64,000 bases of DNA from Chrysemys picta bellii (GCF_011386835.1 NC_088814.1:806001-870000), one strand, 5' to 3'; shown: positions 419-10,486, numbered from the stretch's first letter. Program-made: numbers and translations. The notes: a model not told the origin generated them from the sequence alone.

Positions 419-1833
419 AGAACGGCCAGGCTGGGTCCGACCAATGGTCCATCTAGCCCAGTATCCCTGTCCCTGACAGTGACCGGTGCCAGGTTCCCCA
501 GAGGGAACGACGACGACATTGAGGGATCCATCCCATCGCCCAGTCCCAGTTTCTGGCAGTGAGAGGGTTCGGGACACCTAGAGCATGGGGTTGCGTCCCT
601 GCCCATCTTGGCTAATAGCCATTGATGGACCTGTCCTCAGTGAACTTCTCATTCTTTTTTGAACCCAGTTATAGTTTTGACCTTCACAACATCCTCTGGC
701 AATGAGTTCCACAGGTTGACTGTGTGCCGTGTAAAGAAAGTACTTCCTTATGTTTCTTTTAAACCCATTGCCTAGTAAGTTTATTGGGTGACCCCTGGTT
801 CTTGTGTTATGTGAAGGGGAAAATAACACTTACTTCCTCCACACTGGTCATGATTTTATGGCTCGCTATCTTATCCCCCCGAGTTGTCTCTTTTCCAAGC
901 TGAACAGTATTCATCTTTTTAATCTCTCCTCATATAGAAGCTGTTCCACAGACTTCATCATTTTTGTTGCCCTTCTCTGTGCCTTTTCCAATTCTAATAG
1001 ATCTGTTCAGAGATTTGGCAGCCAGATCTGCAAGCCGTATTCAAGGTGTGGGCGTACCATGGATTTATAGAGTTGCATTATGATATTTGCTGTCTTATTA
1101 TCTATCCCTTTCCTAATGGTTCCCAACACGCTATGAGCTTTTTCGACTGCCGCTGCAGGCATTGAGCAGATGTTCTCAGAGACGCATTATCTATGATGAC
1201 TCTAAGATCTCTTCCTTAGTGGTAACAGCAAATTTAGACCGCATCATTTTGTAAGTATAGCTGGGATTATGTTTTCCAATGTGCATTACTTCGTACTTAT
1301 CAACACTGAATTTCATCTGCCAGTTCGTTGCCCAGTCAGCCAGTTTAGTGAGATCCCTTTGTAACTCTTGGCAGGCAGCTTTGAACTTAACTATCCTGAG
1401 TAATTTTATATCCTCTGCAAACTTTGGCACCTTCCTGTTTACCCCCTTTTCCAGCTCATTTATGAGTGTGTTGAATAGCACTGCTCCCAGAACAGATCCC
1501 TGGGGGACCCCACTATTTACCACTGTCCACTGTGAAAACTGGCCGTTTGTTCCTCCCCTTTGTTTCCTGTCTTTTAATCCGTTACCAACCCATGAAAGGA
1601 CCTTCCCTCTTCTCCCAGGACTTCTTACATTGCGTAAGAGCCTTTGCTGAGGGCCCTTGTGAAAAGCTTTCTGAAAGTCCATGTACACTCTAGCCCCTGG
1701 ATCCCCCTTGTCCACATGCTTGTTGACCCCTCAGAGAATTCTAACAGATCGGTGAGGCCTGCCGTGTTTTCAAATGCCATGTTGATGCTTCCTCAACAAA
1801 TCGTGTTCATCTGTGTCATAATTCTGTTCTTTA
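419..1833 (-). mobile_element. 5'-truncated, degenerate CR1 LINE (3' part of ORF2 reverse transcriptase plus 3' UTR) inside an intron of the RBM43/Deltex-like gene
   Basis: ORF 1191-1715(-) reads YMDFQKAF...SGVPQGSVLGAVLFN...KFAED...WQMKFSVDK, typical CR1 RT motifs. The CR1 3' end begins agaacggcc...ggtccatctagcccagtatcc at about 419. Boundaries are approximate. Confidence 0.9.
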
Positions 1834-2072
1834 TGGGGGTGCTTTGACTACTGCTCATTCCCAGCTGGCATCCGTGCTCCCCTTCTGCCCGTGTTACCCA
1901 CCCACCTCTTCTCTTGTGAGCTCTTTGGGGCAGGGACTCTGTTCTGTGTGGGCTCTGCCCAGCACAACGGGGCCCTGGCTTCTGACCGGGATGCCTAGGC
2001 ATTACCCCAAGTCCCATAGCTAGGGGGCTGGGAAGGCCCTGGTGGCAGACTCTGTGTGGCCTGGCTACCTAC

Positions 2073-5000
2073 CTCCTGCACACCGTCAGGGATGTCATAG
2101 ACGATCTTGAGCGTTGGGTCTCGAAAGTAGCCGGGCAGGCTCTGGGACAAGGTCACGACCTTGAATGTCCCTTTAATAGCCCTGGTGCCCTTGGGGGAGC
2201 TGCAGCAGGCTGGGTGCGTGTCTTCTGCTGCAAAACAAGTCCGGCACAGAGCGTGGCCACACTGGGCGCGGCAGGTCGTTGTGCACGAGCTCTGGCACGC
2301 ATCACACTTCCCAAGCTTGTGCTCATGGGCTTCCTGCCCAGGGCTGGGACCTCTTAGCTCCAGCTCTGAAATCCCAGTCTCCTGTGAGTCCCCATCTCCT
2401 GCTGGGAGCAAGTGGCCTTCCTGGCTCACTGGGTCCCCCTGGCCTGGCTTGGGGCCTCGTCCTGCTGCAGCCCTAGCGGGTAGTGCAGTCCCAGAGCTAG
2501 AGAGCCAGATGGGCAAGGACTGTGGGGCACCATCTGCTGAGGGGGGCCTCGGGCTTCCCCCTGCCTCACTGGGGCCTCCTCGGCTCTTGTCTCTTGCGAA
2601 CTGGAATCTGTCGGGCAGGACCCGCTTTATCCTGGCCGTCTCGGGCTCTCCAGCTGACCTCTCCCCCTTCTGCGGCTCCTGGGGGTCCCCTGGGCTGAAG
2701 CTCTGCCTGCCCACCACGCTGGCATCAAGGAGGCCACTGCCACTCACGTCCTGTGAGTCGCTGTGGTAACTTGGGTCCTCCTGCCTCACCGCCTGCTGGT
2801 AGCTGCTGGTTTTCGTGGCATTCCACCCGGGCCCATACAGTCTCGTGGTGTCGGCACCGTTCAGCTGAGGGGCGCTCTCCGAAAGGTCCGACAGGCCGGC
2901 TGTGCTGCTAACCTCCAGCTGCTGCAGACCCTCCCGGCTATGGCGATATTCTGCAGCCAGCCCTGGGTCCTGGGTTTTCACCTGCTGCGTGGGGCTTGGA
3001 TATTCCTCGGCCGGAGATCCCTCCAGCCCCGGAGACGGGGAAGAAAGCGTCAGAGCACTTCGCCTCCTGGCAGAGAATCTCTGGAAGGCCTCATTGACTC
3101 TCAGCAGTGCTTCCTTGGGGCACGTGAGATGCAGTTTGTACCTGTCTTTGCTGACTCTGACCTGGGCAGAGCATCCTTTCAAGAGGCTGCATAGCTCATT
3201 CAAGGCCTCGTCGTTGGGCCCCTCCACGTCGAGTTCGGAGTAGCTCAGGCTCTGGCATACAAGAGCAGGACACACCGTCTGGCACAGAGCCTCCATCTTC
3301 CACCTGGCTTGGAGGAGCTTTGTCCTGTCCTCAGCTGCGAGCGTCAGCACGGTGCCGCCTTTGTCGCTGCGCTCTGCGAGCAGGACGCCTCCCTCCCTGC
3401 ACAGCCCGTCAATAGTAGAGCCATGAATCTCTTTCAGATACGCCCACTGCACAGGATCCAGGCTGATCTCCTCACTGACCCCGTAGGCCTCGCTGGCTGC
3501 CCTGCTGGGGTCTCTGGGCGTGTCGCTTGCCTTAGACTTTGGAATGGAGAAACTATTGGAGCGTCTCAGCGGGGCGCTAGACTCGGGCGGTTTGGAATCT
3601 AGTGCTGAACAGGTCCCCGTGGTATCGAAAAGGCTCAAGGATTTGAAGGTACTAGACACGCTGCTCATGGGCTGAGACTTTACGGGACCGGGGCTTTTCC
3701 AGCCCCCGAGACTCTGCAAAGTGCTGCTTTCTTTGCCTCCAGCAAACAGAGACAGCGTCTTGGGTCTCAAGAGCAGGGAGGCCCCCTTCCTTCGGTCCCA
3801 ATCCTTCAGCTCCCTCTGCTGAACCTCTGCCGCTGGCCCAGTGATGGCCGCAGAGACGGGCAGGTGGTGCTGACCGCTCGGTGGTGCTGGATCCCTCTGG
3901 CCCGGGGCGCCAGCTTCCTTTAACCAGCTGTCAGAAAGCTGCATCTGCTCCATGAACAGGGAGTTGCGATGCAGCGAGGGCCATGCACTGGAAAGAGACG
4001 CGTCCTGCTTTAGGAAGCTGAAGTTGGCGGCTAGCTTGTGTTCACCTTTAAACTCAAACTTGCCAGGACTCAGTCTTGGGGGTGAAGGATCCACCGTGGG
4101 TTCAGGCTTGCCCAGTCTGGCATCCCCTCCATGAAGGGCGCCTGTGTAGGTGGCCAGGGAGGCGTCGGACATCCTGAGGCCGGCTGTGACTGTTCTCCCG
4201 GTGCTTCGATCTTGGATGTATTGTTTGGCCTGGGAGACATCGACCAGATTCCCGATGAGATAGAGATGCCGCTCATCTTCGTGACAAAGGAGGAGGGGGC
4301 ACAGCTTCTGCAGGTCCCCTAGCAAGGCCCTCTGAGACCTCATGTCACTGCTCAGCTCCCCCTTGCTGATCTTCTCCTTGCGCAGACTGGCTTCCAGCCG
4401 CTGGTAGAGGCCCAGCAGCGCCAGGCGGGCTTGCACCACGGAGCTGATGTTTCCCGTGTTCTTGGAGGAGGCCTGGAGGTAGAGAATGGCGATGCCGTCG
4501 CTGCTGACGTCCACCACGTCGACCTGGTGCTGCTGCAGCACCCGCAGGTACTTGTCGCTGCAGAACTTCTGCATGTACAGGTAGATATCCGCGTCCATCA
4601 CCAGGGAGAAGTCCTCCAGCTGCTCCACAGCTTCTCCGTCCACAGGGTCCCTGTGCAACGGGGGCTCAGACGCCTCCTCGTGCACCTGGCCCGGACTCGG
4701 CTGCTTCTCCACCCTGGGCTCTGGCAAGGGGGAGTGGGGCCTCTGCTGGGAAGCCAACATCCCTGTGACGGTGGCTGGGGGGCTGACTCCCTCCGGGGGG
4801 GCCTCTCCAGCTTGCTGACTCCGCAGCAGCTCCTTGCTGAAGGCCTGCAGCTCCGTGAACGGCCCCTTGACCGTGCACAGCGTCTCCTTCGGGTCGAAGC
4901 TGAACTGCACGGCGCCGTAACGTTTGCGCAGGCTTCTCAGGAGGGTTTTGCCATCCAGGAGCCTTCCGTAGTCGATGATCATACAAACACGCACGAAGAT

Positions 5001-6820
5001 CTGGAGGGACAGGACCAGAGGAGTCAGAGGGCAGCGACTGACGGCAAACAGCCCCGCTGCAGGAGGGAGATGACCCCCCGGCAGGCCCCGCTCCACCACC
5101 CCGGCATCATCAGGACAACGGCAGCTGCACACACTATCTCCCCGCGGCTCCCAGGGTCACTTCAAGGCCAAGTGCCAAGCGCCCCCCCCTTCCCTTCCAC
5201 CCTGTGTTTGCTCTCCCCAAGGGCAGGCAAACAAACCCGCTGGAGCTTCGTGCTGCAATCGCTGCCCATGGAGACGGAGAGGGTGTGCCCAGGCGGGAGG
5301 GCATGGACACAGGCAGATGCAGGCTCTAGGGTCGGGCAGCCATTAATGTGGGAGGGCCGGGCGGCCAGGCCTGACAGAGCCAGCAGCCTGGAGCCGAACT
5401 TTCCCCTCCACACGTGGCCCAAAGGGCTTGGTCCACAGAGTGTTGCCTGCTGGGAGCAGGGAGTGGAGCCGAGTGCGACTTTAATACGGCTACAGCATCT
5501 CCCATGTGCGCAGAGCGCTCTGCAACCAGCCCCGGCCCAGGGATCCCCACGTCCCGTTTCTATTACTCTAAGGGCCCTGCGCATGGAGCCAGGCTCTCCT
5601 CTGCTCGGGCTGCAGTGTCCCTCGCAGGCCGTAGGCTGCCTGTCTCTGACATCATACGTAGTTGCCATGGAGATTATTGTGATGTCACAGACAGCAGGCT
5701 CTGACTGTTGTTGTCACAGAATACAACACCAAAGCCCAGAGCCGGCAGCTGGCCACTGAAATCAGAGGAAGGGCGGAACTACCTCACGGTCTCTGCCACC
5801 AGCGCTTCCCCTAAATGCCCCCGAGGAAACTCGCCTGCTTTCCTGGCTCATGCAGTGACAGAGAAATGAACAGACGTCCCTGCTTGGCCATGTGTGAGCA
5901 GAGAGCTGGGCTTTAATCTCTCACGCATCCCCTCCCTCCAGTGCTATTCCCTCTGCGCTTGGCCAGGTACAAATGCAGACTGACCAAGTGTAAAATTGAG
6001 CCCTGCCTCGGGCGCGTTATCAGCAAAGACCCTTTTAAATCCTCATTTGAATACAAATAAAATGAGTTTGCTTTAACTCTAATTAAGATTAACAGGATTA
6101 GCGGAGTCCCCTTCCTCCGTATCTACAGCAGGTGCAAAGCCTGTTCTGGGCGCCGGCGGGGGCTCTGGGAGGAGCGTACACAGCTGGTGGGGGCCCTGCC
6201 CACCTGATCCCGCTCGTTACCTCGTCAGCGCTCAGCTCGGCCACGTGCGCTGTCACTGTCAGCGGGTATGTCTTTCCACCGACCAACAAAACGTGGTTCT
6301 CCACTTCCAGGACCCTCCGAGCCACTAAACCGAGCAAAGCAATAGACACCAGTCAGCCGGCGGCACCCGGCCCTGGGCTGTGCCGCTGGGCTCCCCAGCC
6401 AGACATGCCCAGAGCGGGATCCTTATTCCTCCCTCTCTCCCACCGCTTTCTTGGGGCAGCCCCTTGTTGGAGGCTGGGGAAGGACAGGACACTGGGAATT
6501 CGACCAGTTACCCTCCAGCATGGGGGGCCCAATGCCGCAGGAGGTGCCCTGGCCCCTGTGCGGAGCTTCTTGGGCTTCCCCCCTGGCCCCAGGTCACAAC
6601 TTAGCCCGCCAAGTGCTGCCTGGCACAAGCCCCCTGCATTACCTCCCGCTTCCTCAAAGGTGACGAGGGCGCAGGCGGGGGAGCCAGCGACGAGCGTGAT
6701 GTCTGCGATCTCTCCGCCGCCGTTGCGGGCGCGCAGGAAGTGGATGGTGAGCTTGTCGGCGACTCTCTCTGGGGGGATGTCGGTTGGGATCCCCCCCACG
6801 CGCACCGTGCGCCCAGCCAT
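2073..6820 (-). CDS. RBM43-like / DTX3L-like protein (RRM, KH-like modules, variant RING, start of Deltex C-terminal domain); 3' end lies outside the window
   Basis: Coding exons 6820-6643, 6324-6221 and 5000-2073, all GT-AG with phases 1, 0, 0, give 1070 codons with no stop. The N-terminus MAGRTVRVGGIPTDIPPERVADKLTIHFLRARNGGGEI resembles the RBM43/NID-type RRM. The RING-like segment is at 2306-2202. SLPGY...LKIVYDIPDGVQE, followed by a GTAGGT donor, matches the first part of a Deltex C-terminal domain. Confidence 0.85.
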
Positions 6821-6989
6821 GCTGCCGGACCCTCCTGCAGGGAAGGAGCGCAGACGTGAGCCAACGAGCAAAGGTCCCAGACCACCGGCCAGGGCTCGCG
6901 GGCTGCCCCCTCCGCGCTGGAGCCTGGGTTCGCAGGCAGGACACATGGGTTCTGTTCTGGTGCATGTGCCCTGCCTAGCAAATATTTAA

Positions 6990-7100
6990 AGCCACACTCC
7001 TCACTGGGGGTAGGACACCTTCCCTCGCTGTGACTCAGTTTCTTCACCTGTACAAGGAATTGCTGCACGAGGGCTTGTGCAGCTGAATTCAGGAGCATTT
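6990..7100 (-). mobile_element. MIR/CORE-SINE fragment
   Basis: gactcagtttcttcacctgtacaa is the reverse complement of the MIR core (ggggaaactgaggc-like). Confidence 0.5.
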
Positions 7101-9577
7101 GCAAAGCACGTTTGGATCTACAGCTAAAGCCTGTTGTTATCCAGGGGAAACCTGGGCAGCCCTAGCACAGCTAGAGCGAAGCCTGTCCCTTCACCGCATG
7201 GCACTCACTGGGAGCAGACCCCACTGGGAATCAGCAGGAAACCACCATCCCCCCGTCACTGGAGCACAGCTGCGCGTGGCCTTGTGTCTCCCCCCAGCCT
7301 GTGCCAGACAACAGCCTCTGCCCAAGGCACGTGCTGCAGACAGTGGGTCAGACAGGGGAGCTCTCATGCCCGGAGAAAGCTGTTCCTCCCCAGCCCCTGT
7401 CCTCACCCAAGGCCCCATTTGCCCCAAGGGAAACTGAGGTCTCCGTTGGATTTGTATCTCAGCAGCTCTTTTCTCCAGGGAGCCCGAATGTTCCAGCCTG
7501 TTTTTTCTGGCTCTGAAGCTCCTGCCAAGGTGGCCAAACCTCCACCACCCCCTTGCAAAGGGGTGTCATTGACACTCTCTTGCAGTGACCAATAGAATGG
7601 CCAACCGCTGCAGGCCCCAAACGGCGCCCTCTAATTCCCCAGCTCTATGAGTTTGGCACCTGGCATCAGGGCCCAGCTTTCTGCGGCCGAATGAGTAAGG
7701 GAGCCTCCGTGCCCTGCCCGCATGAATCCACATCAGTGTCACTCTTTGGAAAGGCACCGGGGGGAGGACAATGCTCAGTCTCTGCTAAGGGCTCCAGGGT
7801 CTGTGGCCAGGTATCTCTTCTCTGCTCATCTGCAAGCAGAGGCGCTGAGCTCTTGCATTATTCATGAGCTTCCACTTAACATGCAAAGATGCAGCTGAAC
7901 ACGCCATAAATATTTATTAGGCCTCCAAGACGGGGACCCTCTGTTGCAAATTCTCATTAAGCCGGGAGGAGCAGATGGAGAGGTGTCCTAGTGGGAGACA
8001 GAGGCAAGAGGCTCAGTCAGTCTCTGCTGGGGGGGAAGGACAGCACCCACAACACTCTTCAGGGTGCAGGGCAGGTCCACACCCACACGCCCCCCCCAGA
8101 CCAACAGCCCATGCACCAGCTGGTAAAGGGATCAGCCCGCGTTTCTGCTGCCCTCCCCCTCTACTGCTGAAGCCAGGAGCGATCTGAGGCCTGAGGAAAA
8201 GCCCCGTTTGCCCCTGCCCCTCTAGGCTGGGCCAGGCCCCCACGGACTGCGCCCCGCTCAGTGGTTTGCCGCGGAGCTGTGGGTGACTGAGCTGTTACCC
8301 TGCCAGCTGCGTTAGACCCAGGATCTCCATATGGTTCTTATACAGCAGCTGTCCCTGCAGTCCCCAGTGGGAACTGGGCGTAGGGGCCCGCACCTGCCCC
8401 CAGCCGTTCAGGTGTCCACATCCCCACCTGGGTCCTGTGTCACGGGCTCAGCGTGAGCACGCGGCTCCAGGGGGCGCGTCAGTCGATCAATCACAAGACC
8501 GGGAAGGTTTAATATTTAAACAAGCTGTAGAATTTTTCAGCAGGGAAGGTAGCAGCAGCAGGCCCCCCGGGAGCTGCGCGGTGTTGCTGACGGCTGCCTC
8601 TCGGGGCTGCTGAGACGCTCCACAGAACAGCAGCTCCCGAAATACGAGAGAAGCGAGGGCGCTGCAGGAGGCGATGGCAGCAGCAAACTGCAACCCTGGC
8701 CTTGGCCTCCATGGCCCCTGTCCCTGCAGGGCCGCCCCAAGGGGCGCGGGGGGCCGGACACTGTGTTAACAATGCAGCCCTGGGGCGAGCAGGGGGGCCT
8801 CGTTCGGCTCTCGCCTTCTGGGAGCGGCATGGACTGAAAGTGCTGCCCTGAAAGAGGAGTGTAGAGAAATGGCACCAGCTTGGGCATCAGCTGCCCCCGC
8901 CCCTGCCCCCGGGCAGTGCCCAGCGAGTGGAACCAGGGACTCCACACAGGCACCAGGGCCCAGCCACATGGCGGCGAGGACCAGATCCCAGCCCCAGTAA
9001 CTTGGTCCCCTGGTGCTGCCTGGGAGCCAGGGGGGTGCACGGCGGGAGCCGGCCAGGTGCAGGGTGGAAGCCGGGCAGGAGTCGGGCGGGTGCAGGAGCC
9101 GGGCGGGCACAAGGTGGGTGCAGGGGGGTGCCAGGTGGGTGCCAGGCTCTGCTCCAGGGCAGGCCCCCTTTGCTGACCCCCCCGGCCCGGGCAGCGAGGG
9201 GGGCTGGCGGCGGGGGGCTGGCCAAGGGCAGGGCCAGGCCCCCCGCCTGCCCGGCGCAGGGGCACCGAGTGAGCACGTGGGGCTGGGGCCAGCGAGGGCT
9301 GAGGCCCCCGGACCCCCCAGGCCAGATCCGCGCCCCCCAAGCGCCCAGCCCCGCCCCGGGTGATGCCGGGGGCGGGGGCCGCACCCCAAGTTCCAGCCCC
9401 CCCGCCCCCGGGACGGTGCCCACAGCGTGGGGGGCCAGGCCGGGCCAGTAACTCCCCGCCCCCCCCCACTGCGCACGAGGGCCCGGGGGGGGGGCGGGGC
9501 TGTGTGTGCCCCTGGGGGGGGGGCCCTGCCCATGGGGGGGGGCGCGCGGCTCCTTCCCGCCCCCCCACGCTCGGTAC

Positions 9578-9616
9578 CTGCGGGCTCCGCTCCGGCTCCG
9601 GCCCAGCCGCCGCGGC
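9578..9616 (-). other. Putative non-coding first exon of the RBM43/Deltex-like gene
   Basis: Lies in a CpG island just downstream of an ISRE. Donor CAG|GTACCG at 9578. A matching acceptor ttccctgcag| lies 14 nt upstream of the ATG (exon starts 6834). TSS is inferred. Confidence 0.6.
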
Positions 9617-9635
9617 GGGAAACGAAAGTGAAAGT
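9617..9635. promoter_or_regulatory. ISRE/IRF element in the promoter of the RBM43/Deltex-like gene
   Basis: gggaaacgaaagtgaaagt contains three GAAA cores at IRF spacing. Confidence 0.8.
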
Positions 9636-9648
9636 CCGAGAGGAGCTG

Positions 9649-9856
9649 CCCCCCCCCTCCCGCGGGACCCGCCCCGCCCCTACAGCCCCCCCCCCCCGCG
9701 GGACCCGCCCCGCCCCTACAGCCCCCCCCCCGCGGGAGCCGCCCCGCCAGCCCCCCCCCCCCCCCCCCCGCGGGAGCCGCCCCGCCCCTACAGCCCCCCC
9801 CGCCCCGCGGGACCCGCCCCTCCACCCCACCCCCCGCGGGACCCGCCCCGCCCCTA
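9649..9856. repeat. GC-box-rich minisatellite (about 6 copies, 34-37 bp, cgcgggacccgccccgcccctacag core)
   Basis: cgcggga recurs at about 9661, 9697, 9731, 9769, 9806 and 9835. Confidence 0.85.
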
Positions 9857-10486
9857 GTCATGCTGGGGTCTGTCTGTCCTGCTGGGTGTGCAACCCCCTC
9901 CCCCCGCAACCCCCAGGAACCTCTGCCTGCATGGCCCACCCCACGGACAAGGACCTGACCCCACACCTGCCAGGGCCCCCTGCCCAGCGGGCTAATGCAG
10001 CCCTGCTCCCAGCAGTGCCGTGGGGCTGACGCACAGTGACAGCACGGCTGGGTGTCACACGCCCCTGCCACACCAGCGGGGGCAGAAATTCAGGGTGGGG
10101 AATCCCTGAATAACCCTCCTTTGAGACCACATCACCATGTAAACATCAGAGTTCGGCTAAACACTGACCCCCCCAGGCTCCAAACTCATTTGTTAACCCT
10201 GCACCCTGCTGGAAAGAGGGGTCCGAGCGGGGCCTAAACACTATTGGGTGTGGTGGGCAGAGACCCACGGCTCATTTCACTCCATTCCATGCCCGCGTCG
10301 CCCATTCTGGGTGTTGTCGCCAGCCAGGGCTTCGTGGAGAGCACCCCGGGCCTGCTCACTGCGCTGAGCGAAAACAGGACGCTCCGAAATGGGGTTCTCT
10401 TGCCCCATGGCTCTCACACGATCCTTCTCTCCCTGCTCGTGCCCAGCTCCACAACACCGCAGATCCACACTCGGCCCTGACAATAC

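What the first reader, a model, noticed from the sequence alone, without database searches (positions are those of the whole stretch)
2073..9635. Uncharacterised RBM43-paralogue fused to a RING-Deltex E3 module, in tandem with IFI35
Seen in the sequence: a >1070-aa spliced ORF whose first part resembles RBM43 (RTVRVGGIP; DE|IF exon junction; LVMDADIYLYMQKFC; SLRKEKI; HLYLIG). It continues to a RING and the SLPGY...IVYDIPDGVQ start of a Deltex C-terminal domain, with a donor where that domain is interrupted. Established knowledge, recalled rather than looked up: human RBM43 lies in tandem downstream of NMI, the IFI35 paralogue, near RND3; human IFI35 abuts VAT1 near RND2 with no such gene between; DTX3L has RRM-KH-RING-DTC architecture and is interferon-induced. 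Inference: this is the duplicated sister of RBM43, lost from the human locus, and it keeps an ancestral ubiquitin-ligase tail that RBM43 lost. That would make it a candidate interferon-inducible, nucleic-acid or ADP-ribose-directed E3 ligase. It may already carry an automated 'uncharacterised' or 'RBM43-like' label.
Basis: partly seen in the sequence, partly recalled or inferred. Interest (0 to 1): 0.9.

Follow-up and report, generated by a model that had tools for sequence, protein, structure and literature searches.

The report
Sixth Deltex-type gene beside IFI35
This painted-turtle gene next to IFI35 is an intact member of an unstudied vertebrate gene family, not found in mammals, that has the full domain layout of the antiviral ligase DTX3L, is the nearest full-length relative of RBM43, and has lost the DTX3L catalytic residues.

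Summary
On the minus strand at 2073-9637 lies an intact spliced gene. It matches the NCBI model LOC101953675 of Chrysemys picta, 1162 aa. Its last exon, encoding most of the Deltex C-terminal (DTC) domain, lies left of the window.

Layout: NID-type RRM, a small KH-like domain, two tandem-KH modules, a RING-like motif, then DTC. This is the layout of DTX3L with long disordered linkers.

The family is named si:busm1-163l24.3 in fish and sharks. It occurs from lamprey to birds. No mammalian member turned up.

In crane and turtle the gene order is RUNDC1, RPL27, IFI35, this gene; in crane a VAT1-like gene follows. In hoatzin, RBM43 sits the same way behind NMI.

The N-terminal 360 residues are much closer to RBM43 than to DTX3L (hhalign E 3.7e-43 against 5.7e-16). 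The RING-DTC clade is sister to DTX3L-type ones and not nested in them. The "RBM43 sister that kept the ligase tail" reading is therefore supported, though trees cannot resolve the exact branching.

A conserved ISRE sits at the promoter.

One correction matters. The three DTC residues needed for ADP-ribose or nucleic-acid ubiquitination in DTX2 and DTX3L (His, His/Tyr, Glu) read Pro, Asn and a non-acidic residue almost family-wide. The sauropsid RING is also non-canonical. DTX3L-type chemistry is therefore unlikely.

The parts
9618..9637 (.). ISRE-type element GGAAACGAAAGTGAAAGTCC at the putative promoter
   Evidence: exact site here, with a second copy sharing the first 17 bases at 18448-18467 in front of IFI35; none in 100 shuffles. 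The core and the following 5' exon are conserved in the crane locus L005 at about 9745-9800.
9578..9617 (-). Putative non-coding first exon. The start is inferred; the donor is cag|gtaccg after 9578.
   Evidence: Sequence read. The crane has the same TTTCNCTTTCGTTTCCC...GGCCGGAGC...GCAG|gta block about 200 bp upstream of its ATG exon. The transcription start itself is not shown.
6643..6834 (-). Exon with the ATG (6820): first half of the NID-type RRM (MAGRTV...FEEAG), ending in phase 1
   Evidence: Pfam NID and RRM_PARP14. PDB sequence hits to the IFI35 and NMI NID domains at E 2e-7. The intron position and phase match hoatzin RBM43.
6221..6324 (-). Exon encoding the second half of the RRM (VARRV...SADE), ending in phase 0
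   Evidence: Hoatzin RBM43 has the same phase-0 junction (CEN|VF against ADE|IF).
2073..5000 (-). Giant exon of 976 codons: KH-like 1, tandem-KH A, linker motifs, tandem-KH B, RING-like motif and the first 34 residues of DTC
   Evidence: 100% identical to P0001.
4803..5000 (-). Small KH-like domain (aa 95-160; beta-alpha-beta-beta-alpha)
   Evidence: AlphaFold model m7134f7fa73ac, pLDDT about 86. The precomputed Pfam KH_I_RBM43 hit probably lies here: it occurs in 346-369-aa N-terminal fragments alongside NID or KH_DTX3L, but its coordinates are not on record.
4197..4619 (-). Tandem-KH module A (aa 222-362), without a GXXG loop
   Evidence: Model. Weak Pfam KH_DTX3L hit. Aligns to RBM43 and to DTX3L.
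3048..3491 (-). Tandem-KH module B (aa 598-745), a second copy of the same fold
   Evidence: Model mac57e66594f8, pLDDT 93.8. Best AFDB matches are RBM43 residues 198-339 (TM 0.77) and DTX3L residues 230-364 (TM 0.70-0.76). PDB matches are tandem-KH proteins such as Pno1, Krr1 and FBP.
2202..2306 (-). RING-like motif, C993...C1027. Six canonical ligands are kept, and C7-x2-C8 is replaced by PACC.
   Evidence: The PACC variant occurs in 10 of 10 turtles, in tuatara and in 63 of 64 bird and unnamed bird-like sequences. The canonical C3HC4 pattern is kept in shark, coelacanth, frogs, salamanders and a caecilian.
2073..2174 (-). Start of the Deltex C-terminal domain (aa 1037-1070). The rest, including the residues at the catalytic positions, lies in the exon left of the window.
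   Evidence: Pfam DTC at E 1.9e-31 on P0001. PDB sequence hits to DTX2, DTX3L and DTX1.
10604..18467 (-). Context: the upstream neighbour IFI35, with its own ISRE at 18448-18467
   Evidence: Frog and fish IFI35 proteins hit its exons at 58-59% identity, against 41-43% for the hoatzin NMI locus. Colinear with crane RUNDC1-RPL27-IFI35.

Best explanation
This is the painted-turtle member of an ancient vertebrate gene family. Fish and shark annotation calls it si:busm1-163l24.3; tetrapod annotation gives only LOC numbers.

The protein has the whole DTX3L layout: a NID-type RRM, a small KH-like domain, two tandem-KH modules, a RING, and a Deltex C-terminal domain.

The gene is the downstream positional partner of IFI35, just as RBM43 is the downstream partner of NMI. 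Its N-terminal module is far closer to RBM43 than to DTX3L. Its RING-DTC forms a clade of its own beside the DTX3L-type clade.

The simplest history is this (inferred). A DTX3L-like ancestor gave rise to a [NID gene]-[RRM-KH-RING-DTC gene] pair. That pair was duplicated early in vertebrates. The IFI35-side copy kept the ligase tail, the NMI-side copy (RBM43) lost it, and mammals lost the IFI35-side gene.

The gene carries a conserved ISRE at its own promoter. It is therefore most likely interferon-induced together with IFI35 (inferred from the sequence element; induction has not been measured).

Proposed mechanism (inferred). The protein is an interferon-induced RING-type ligase or adaptor. 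Its strongly conserved but remodelled DTC pocket (Pro, Asn and a non-acidic residue in place of His, His/Tyr and Glu, plus a shortened loop) probably serves as a recognition module. It is unlikely to catalyse ubiquitin esterification of ADP-ribose or of nucleic-acid 3' ends. The KH-like and RRM domains lack canonical nucleic-acid motifs, as in DTX3L. They may serve for assembly as much as for RNA binding.
For: Identity and integrity.

Family range: turtles, crocodilian, birds, tuatara, squamates, caecilians and salamanders; frogs, coelacanth, lungfish, paddlefish, sharks and teleosts; lamprey 1700-aa RRM, 3x KH, RING-DTC protein.

Expression: the chicken orthologue appears as an uninterrupted ORF in assembled contigs indexed in 358 blocks of the collection (24 contigs read, from Logan assemblies of public sequencing runs). 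One contig also carries the 3' half of IFI35 and a convergent VAT1-like ORF. Small turtle assemblies, probably RNA, from four studies (the rows guessed to be RNA) hold 81-92% of the big exon.

Architecture.

Closeness to RBM43:
- Foldseek E 8e-22 to human RBM43 against 1e-17 to DTX3L.
- hhalign score 323 (E 3.7e-43) to RBM43 against 124 (E 5.7e-16) to DTX3L. RBM43 to DTX3L scores 115.
- Both RRM introns share position and phase with hoatzin RBM43.

Synteny: crane RUNDC1-RPL27-IFI35-gene-VAT1-like; turtle colinear; hoatzin NMI-RBM43 in tandem, same orientation.

RING-DTC tree: the family clade has SH-aLRT 100. It joins the DTX3L-type sequences at 99 and lies outside a clade that holds vertebrate and invertebrate DTX3L.

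ISRE.

Catalytic positions. The mutant data are in PMC11460948.

Constraint: the DTC is the best-conserved part of the protein, with 0.62-0.71 identity to the turtle across 26 orthologues.
Against: - The N-terminal tree does not resolve the order of this family, RBM43, a third clade and DTX3L. The free tree weakly (79/59) puts this family on the DTX3L side. AU tests reject none of the groupings.
- Mammalian RBM43 sequences could not be put in the tree. Only hoatzin and cartilaginous-fish RBM43 were available.
- Absence from mammals rests on protein searches, not on inspection of mammalian genomes.
- Interferon induction is inferred from a motif only.
- Loss of the His/Glu pair argues against DTX3L chemistry but does not show what the pocket binds.
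- Whether the PACC RING variant still binds zinc and an E2 is unknown.
Confidence: 0.72

Rival explanations
1. The protein works like DTX3L: a RING-DTC enzyme that ubiquitinates ADP-ribose or the 3' ends of single-stranded nucleic acids, guided by its RRM and KH domains.
For: - Same domain order as DTX3L.
- The DTC fold is clearly present and highly conserved.
- The ancestral RING is canonical in sharks, lobe-finned fish and amphibians.
Against: - The positions of DTX3L H707 and E733, called catalytic and conserved across all DTX members in PMC11460948, and of Y719, are Pro, Asn and a non-acidic residue in nearly all members, including shark and lamprey.
- The loop that carries DTX2 Ser568 is three residues shorter.
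- Pfam RING models do not match most members.
Confidence: 0.1
2. Pseudo-ligase or scaffold. In sauropsids, turtle included, the RING no longer recruits an E2. The protein acts only as an interferon-induced adaptor or RNA-binding platform, perhaps with IFI35/NMI through its NID-type RRM.
For: - C7-x2-C8 is replaced by PACC in turtles, birds and tuatara. Ligand loss is heavier in squamates and gharial.
- The residue before C2, Ile in DTX3L, is variable and often polar.
- The RRM is most similar to the NID domains of IFI35 and NMI.
- The neighbouring genes are co-oriented and less than 1 kb apart, and read-through gene models exist.
Against: - PACC itself is conserved across turtles, birds and tuatara. 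This looks like constraint rather than decay.
- Six ligands remain, and turtles have a His three residues before the CC.
- No evidence of binding to IFI35.
Confidence: 0.25
3. Fusion origin. The gene arose by joining an RBM43-like 5' part to a RING-DTC exon block copied from DTX3L, rather than by keeping an ancestral tail.
For: The two halves have different nearest named relatives: RBM43 for the N-terminus and DTX3L-type for RING-DTC.
Against: - The second tandem-KH module and the overall domain order match DTX3L along the whole length.
- Both halves lie outside the vertebrate DTX3L clade.
- The full architecture is already present in lamprey and sharks.
- RBM43 and DTX3L N-termini are themselves homologous. 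One ancestral full-length gene therefore explains everything with losses only.
Confidence: 0.1
4. Annotation artefact. The ORF is only a 3' extension or read-through product of IFI35 and not a gene of its own.
For: Some databases name the chicken and frog products 'interferon-induced 35 kDa protein'. A chicken contig joins both ORFs.
Against: - IFI35 ends with its own stop codon.
- This gene has its own ATG exon, its own conserved ISRE and its own 5' exon.
- Stand-alone models of about 1150 aa exist in more than 100 species.
Confidence: 0.03

Closest known systems
DTX3L (E3 ubiquitin-protein ligase DTX3L / BBAP)
   Same: - Same domain order along the whole length: RRM, KH-like, tandem-KH modules, RING, DTC (PMC11460948).
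- The RING-DTC is nearest to the DTX3L-type clade.
- A gene of the interferon system by its promoter element.
   Different: - A separate clade that is not nested in DTX3L.
- Lies beside IFI35, not PARP9.
- About 400 extra residues of disordered linker.
- The catalytic His and Glu and the Tyr/His of the DTC pocket are replaced.
- The RING is non-canonical in sauropsids and ray-finned fish.
- No mammalian member was found.
RBM43 (RNA-binding protein 43)
   Same: - The RRM, KH-like and tandem-KH parts are colinear over all of RBM43 (Foldseek E 8e-22; hhalign E 3.7e-43).
- Same two intron positions and phases.
- Same position downstream of a NID-domain gene, in the same orientation.
   Different: - RBM43 ends after the first tandem-KH module.
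- This protein goes on for about 800 residues with a second tandem-KH module, a RING and a DTC.
- Separate, well-supported clades, both present in sharks.
NMI / IFI35 NID domains and PARP14 RRMs
   Same: The N-terminal RRM scores as NID and RRM_PARP14 in Pfam. It matches solved IFI35 and NMI NID domains at E about 1e-7.
   Different: There is only one such domain here, followed by KH, RING and DTC. NMI and IFI35 have two NIDs and no ligase part.

Membership tests
DELTEX family (RING-DTC E3 ligases) | Deltex C-terminal (DTC) domain | tested here: met
   Pfam PF18102 at E 1.9e-31 over profile positions 6-133 of 133. phmmer to solved DTX2, DTX3L and DTX1 at E 1e-19 to 2e-21.
DELTEX family (RING-DTC E3 ligases) | Canonical C3HC4 RING directly before the DTC | tested here: inconclusive
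   The turtle keeps C1, C2, C3, H4, C5 and C6 but has PACC in place of C7-x2-C8. The pattern is canonical in shark, coelacanth and amphibian orthologues. No Pfam RING hit on the turtle protein.
DELTEX family (RING-DTC E3 ligases) | Catalytic His and Glu of the DTC pocket (DTX2 H582/E608 = DTX3L H707/E733), said to be conserved across DTX members (PMC11460948) | tested here: not met
   Pro and Leu in the turtle. Pro in nearly all family members that could be aligned, with a variable non-acidic residue in most at the Glu position.
DELTEX family (RING-DTC E3 ligases) | ADP-ribose-contacting His/Tyr (DTX2 H594 = DTX3L Y719) | tested here: not met
   Asn in the turtle and in most of the family.
DELTEX family (RING-DTC E3 ligases) | E2-dependent ubiquitin transfer | not testable with these tools
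   Needs a biochemical assay.
DTX3L orthologous group | Falls inside the DTX3L clade | tested here: not met
   Separate clades in both the N-terminal tree and the RING-DTC tree.
DTX3L orthologous group | Genomic pairing with PARP9/PARP14 | tested here: not met
   Flanked by IFI35 and a VAT1-like gene in the crane, and by IFI35, RPL27 and RUNDC1 in the turtle.
RBM43 family | RRM, then KH-like, then tandem-KH module, colinear with RBM43 | tested here: met
   Foldseek to human, rat and mouse RBM43 covering residues 14-357. hhalign probability 100%, E 3.7e-43. Precomputed Pfam KH_I_RBM43.
RBM43 family | Protein ends after the tandem-KH module (about 340-480 aa); Pfam RBM43_C | tested here: not met
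   1162 aa with a further KH module, RING and DTC. PF28453 is recorded for RBM43 proteins but for none of the family members listed.
RBM43 family | Falls inside the RBM43 clade; lies beside NMI | tested here: not met
   Separate starred clades. The neighbour is IFI35, not NMI.
Interferon-stimulated genes | ISRE at the promoter | tested here: met
   GGAAACGAAAGTGAAAGTCC at 9618-9637, a near-copy in front of IFI35, and the same element conserved in the crane.
Interferon-stimulated genes | mRNA induced by interferon or viral mimics | not tested
   No suitable read data could be laid. No paper was found for the gene identifiers.

The most novel reading that the evidence does not exclude
Vertebrates ancestrally had a sixth Deltex-type gene, and mammals lost it. 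It forms an interferon-driven tandem unit with IFI35, parallel to DTX3L-PARP9 and RBM43-NMI. Its DTC pocket was re-tooled early: Pro, Asn and a non-acidic residue, already so in lamprey and sharks. The new pocket would serve a different ligand or chemistry from every studied Deltex protein. On this reading RBM43 is the decapitated remnant of the same kind of ligase.
Probability: 0.3. Interest if true: 0.8.

Novelty: new variant of a known kind. Interest (0 to 1): 0.62.

Why it matters
Work on Deltex ligases and ADP-ribose-linked ubiquitination counts five family members (DTX1-4 and DTX3L). A 2026 evolutionary survey of the family does the same, and mentions neither RBM43, IFI35 nor VAT1.

This family would add a sixth member. 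It is ancient and conserved, probably interferon-controlled, and present in chicken, zebrafish, Xenopus-type frogs and sharks, but apparently not in mammals.

It also gives RBM43, an interferon-linked protein of little-known function, an evolutionary origin as a truncated DTX3L-type ligase. The pairing IFI35-this gene and NMI-RBM43 links NMI/IFI35 biology to Deltex biology.

The naturally altered catalytic positions in an otherwise strongly conserved DTC domain offer a ready-made test of what that pocket does beyond ADP-ribose chemistry.

For bird and fish immunology it is a candidate antiviral gene with no mammalian counterpart.

Tried and rejected
There is therefore no read-level splice or 5'-end evidence for the turtle.
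- The look-up of encoding contigs found no exact record for P0001.
- A word-index search with residues 1-430 found no RBM43. RBM43 sequences came only through the elephant-shark hit. Mammalian RBM43 sequences could not be fetched, so they enter only through Foldseek.
- Complex prediction of the chicken IFI35 C-terminal half with chicken residues 1-160 gave no verdict, score 0.00. This counts neither for nor against binding.
- PDB sequence searches could not tell IFI35 from NMI for the turtle NID exons. tblastn with named IFI35 proteins settled it.
- Foldseek against the PDB with the N-terminal model returned only generic RRM and KH tandems.
- AU tests of the three possible groupings of the four N-terminal clades rejected none.
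- Literature searches for the fish gene name and six LOC identifiers gave nothing. No paper linking RBM43 to DTX3L or to KH domains in an evolutionary sense was found.
- The protein-atlas search added no taxonomic resolution.
- I considered and rejected the idea that the ORF is a pseudogene. The frame is open over 1070 codons, and the DTC and RRM are the best-conserved parts across 26 orthologues.

Full report
**What is there**

The window comes from the painted turtle. The large exon's product is 100% identical to NCBI 'uncharacterized protein LOC101953675 isoform X2 [Chrysemys picta bellii]' (P0001, 1162 aa).

A 1045-codon open frame lies on the minus strand at 1995-5132. I read the splice sites from the sequence. 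The gene has these parts:
- a putative non-coding first exon ending at 9578;
- an exon at 6834-6643 with the ATG at 6820;
- an exon at 6324-6221;
- a giant exon at 5000-2073 that ends at GAG|gtaggt.

The last 92 residues, most of the Deltex C-terminal domain, are encoded left of the window. A CR1-type LINE fragment sits in that last intron. The window contains no N runs.

**Domains**

Pfam on the full protein finds DTC (E 1.9e-31), NID, RRM_PARP14_1 and RRM_PARP14_3 at residues 1-90, and a weak KH_DTX3L hit at 230-355. Precomputed Pfam 38 hits add PF26774, named KH_I_RBM43.

An AlphaFold model of residues 1-430, built from 19 orthologues, shows three folded parts:
- an RRM at 1-90;
- a small beta-alpha-beta-beta-alpha domain at 99-158;
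- a tandem-KH module at 226-360.

A second model, of residues 598-745, has pLDDT 93.8 and shows a second tandem-KH module. Its best matches in AlphaFold DB are the C-terminal domain of RBM43 (TM 0.77) and DTX3L residues 230-364 (TM 0.70-0.76). Among solved structures it resembles tandem KH proteins.

The overall order is therefore RRM, KH-like, tandem KH, tandem KH, RING-like, DTC. This is the order described for DTX3L (PMC11460948), stretched by long poorly conserved linkers. Those linkers hold a few short conserved motifs.

**Who else has it**

Full-length orthologues of about 1000-1250 aa occur in:
- turtles, a gharial, more than 80 birds, tuatara, squamates, caecilians and salamanders;
- frogs, coelacanth, lungfish, paddlefish, teleosts and sharks, where NCBI names them 'si:busm1-163l24.3' after a zebrafish clone.

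Lampreys have two relatives: a 1700-aa protein with an RRM, three KH modules and the same kind of RING-DTC, and a shorter RRM-KH protein.

No mammal appears among the 120 listed hits. In the exhaustive representative search, every named representative in the score range where a mammalian orthologue would fall is non-mammalian. This is absence from protein sets, not from genomes.

**Relation to RBM43 and DTX3L**

Foldseek with the N-terminal model ranks human, rat and mouse RBM43 first (E 8e-22 to 7e-18, covering all of RBM43). Human and mouse DTX3L come next (E 1e-17 and 2e-14, residues about 10-369).

Profile-profile comparison gives these results:

| Comparison | Score | E-value |
|---|---|---|
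| this family vs RBM43 | 323 | 3.7e-43 |
| this family vs DTX3L N-terminus | 124 | 5.7e-16 |
| RBM43 vs DTX3L | 115 | 1.3e-14 |

So the three are homologous over this module. This family and RBM43 are much closer to each other than either is to DTX3L.

The two introns that split the RRM are at the same positions and phases in the turtle gene and in hoatzin RBM43.

A maximum-likelihood tree of the module (54 rows, 380 columns) recovers four groups:
- this family plus lamprey (96/89);
- RBM43 of cartilaginous fish plus hoatzin (98/98);
- a third clade (100/98) of a caecilian protein named RBM43, a lungfish protein and the teleost si:dkey-154b15.1;
- a long-branched DTX3L group.

The order among these groups is unresolved, and AU tests reject no arrangement. 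Sharks have both this gene and RBM43, so the split predates jawed vertebrates.

A tree of the RING-DTC part puts all members of this family, lamprey included, in one clade (SH-aLRT 100). That clade joins the DTX3L-type sequences (99), apart from a basal set dominated by sequences with His at the DTX2-H594 position, which I take to be DTX1-4-like (those sequences were unnamed). It lies outside a clade that contains vertebrate DTX3L together with starfish, acorn-worm and amphioxus DTX3L-like proteins. The gene is therefore not a recent transposed copy of DTX3L.

**Synteny**

In the whooping crane the order is RUNDC1, RPL27, a two-NID gene, this gene, then a convergent VAT1-like ADH-family gene. 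The turtle window is colinear with the crane for RUNDC1, RPL27, the NID gene and this gene.

The NID gene is IFI35. Named frog and fish IFI35 proteins match its exons at 58-59% identity, against 41-43% for the hoatzin NMI locus.

In hoatzin, RBM43 lies 5 kb downstream of a two-NID gene, in the same orientation. The first NID of that gene is about 76% identical (29 of 38 aligned residues) to solved human NMI and does not hit IFI35.

The human order RUNDC1-RPL27-IFI35-VAT1, and NMI next to RBM43, is recalled knowledge and was not tested here.

Two parallel tandem pairs, IFI35 with this gene and NMI with RBM43, fit duplication of an ancestral pair. Because this family and DTX3L share the whole layout, retention of an ancestral tail here and loss in RBM43 is the most economical reading. 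That reading is an inference.

**Regulation and expression**

A 20-base ISRE-type element, GGAAACGAAAGTGAAAGTCC, lies at 9618-9637, directly 5' of the putative first exon. A copy identical over its first 17 bases lies at 18448-18467 in front of IFI35. Shuffled sequence never gave two such sites.

The crane has the same element and the same following block up to the GCAG|gta donor, about 200 bp before its ATG exon. It has another ISRE in front of IFI35. Interferon control is thus well motivated but not measured.

The chicken orthologue is found as an uninterrupted ORF in assembled contigs indexed in 358 blocks of the collection (24 contigs read, from Logan assemblies of public sequencing runs). 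One contig also carries the 3' half of IFI35 and a VAT1-like ORF. This explains why some databases call the product 'IFI35 isoform X1'.

Small turtle assemblies from four studies (the rows guessed to be RNA) hold 81-92% of the big exon. Their RNA nature is a guess of the index.

**The ligase tail is not DTX3L-like in its chemistry**

In DTX2 the DTC pocket uses H582, H594 and E608. The equivalents in DTX3L are H707, Y719 and E733. For ubiquitination of single-stranded DNA, H707A abolishes activity, E733A considerably impairs it, and Y719A is defective. The His and Glu are described as conserved across DTX members (PMC11460948).

In the turtle protein these positions are P1128, N1141 and L1155 (IPHKT, RNGYPD, RALL; alignments). 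Across about 150 family members with this region aligned:
- the first position is Pro in nearly all, and Ser, Leu or Ile in a few amphibians;
- the second is mostly Asn;
- the third is variable and in most members not acidic.

Shark and lamprey already have Pro at the first position. The loop that carries DTX2 Ser568 is three residues shorter.

Yet the DTC is the best-conserved part of the protein. The pocket is therefore remodelled and constrained, not decaying.

The RING differs between lineages:
- It is canonical C3HC4 in sharks, coelacanth, frogs, salamanders and a caecilian.
- Ray-finned fish lack the His ligand.
- Turtles (10 of 10), tuatara and 63 of 64 bird and unnamed bird-like sequences replace C7-x2-C8 by P-A/T-C-C.
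- Squamates and the gharial lose more ligands.

Pfam RING models do not match the turtle protein. They are also absent from the family's Atlas clusters, although present in 92-100% of members of DTX3L-type clusters.

I therefore rate DTX3L-type esterification of ADP-ribose or nucleic acids as unlikely. Conventional E3 activity is possible, more so in lineages with a canonical RING. A recognition role for the DTC is the most likely common denominator.

**What I could not do**

Read-level RNA support in the turtle failed. A structure-based test of binding between the NID-type RRM and IFI35 gave no verdict. Mammalian RBM43 could not be put in the trees.

**Novelty**

I found no paper on the gene under any identifier. 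I found none linking RBM43 with DTX3L. A 2026 preprint on Deltex evolution works with five paralogues and mentions neither RBM43, IFI35 nor VAT1.

Pfam curators have named KH domains in RBM43, so part of the fold relationship is implicit in databases. I class the finding as a new variant of a known kind: a sixth, mammal-lost Deltex-type family with altered catalytic positions, which also explains where RBM43 came from.

Noticed in passing
P0299, P0300, P0290, P0287-P0298; L004: A third RRM-KH clade of 500-630 aa with no RING or DTC. It holds a caecilian protein annotated RBM43, a lungfish protein and the teleost si:dkey-154b15.1. It is distinct from the shark-plus-hoatzin RBM43 clade and may be a further ancient duplicate. 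The pike copy lies 7 kb from a class-I myosin gene.
   Followed up: partly
P0173 (280 aa), P0188 (305 aa): Short predicted products, species not looked up, that join the RRM and first KH-like domain directly to the DTC domain, skipping the KH modules and the RING. They may be exon-skipped isoforms or mis-models.
   Followed up: no
P0207: A catfish protein annotated 'E3 ubiquitin-protein ligase DTX3L' has the Pro/Asn/Ala pocket and falls inside this family's RING-DTC clade. Some fish 'DTX3L' labels are probably wrong.
   Followed up: partly
P0181 and P0263/P0272: Lampreys carry a 1700-aa protein with an RRM, three tandem-KH modules and a RING-DTC (pocket Pro/Glu/Ala). They also carry a separate 937-1071-aa RRM-KH protein without RING-DTC, which groups with this family in the N-terminal tree.
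   Followed up: partly
window 14100-16400: About 2.2 kb of tandem repeat inside an IFI35 intron. It reads as a proline-rich ORF of more than 750 codons on the plus strand and has a strong GC skew of -0.55.
   Followed up: no
window about 1000-1800, minus strand: A CR1-type LINE reverse-transcriptase fragment inside the last intron of the gene.
   Followed up: no
window 9640-9870: G-rich repeats of roughly 60 bp (ggggcggggcgggtcccgcgg...) directly upstream of the ISRE and downstream of IFI35's last exon.
   Followed up: no
L001 (chicken contig), P0306 (frog, 1553 aa): Read-through or joined models of IFI35 and this gene. The chicken product is named 'IFI35 isoform X1' in one source, and a frog model fuses both proteins.
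   Followed up: partly
P0001 residues 401-425, 541-580, 881-900: Short conserved motifs inside otherwise poorly conserved linkers (KFEFKGEHKLAANFS; STFKSLSLFDTTG...LRRSNSFS; ARIKRVLPDRFQF). They are candidate docking or phosphorylation sites.
   Followed up: no
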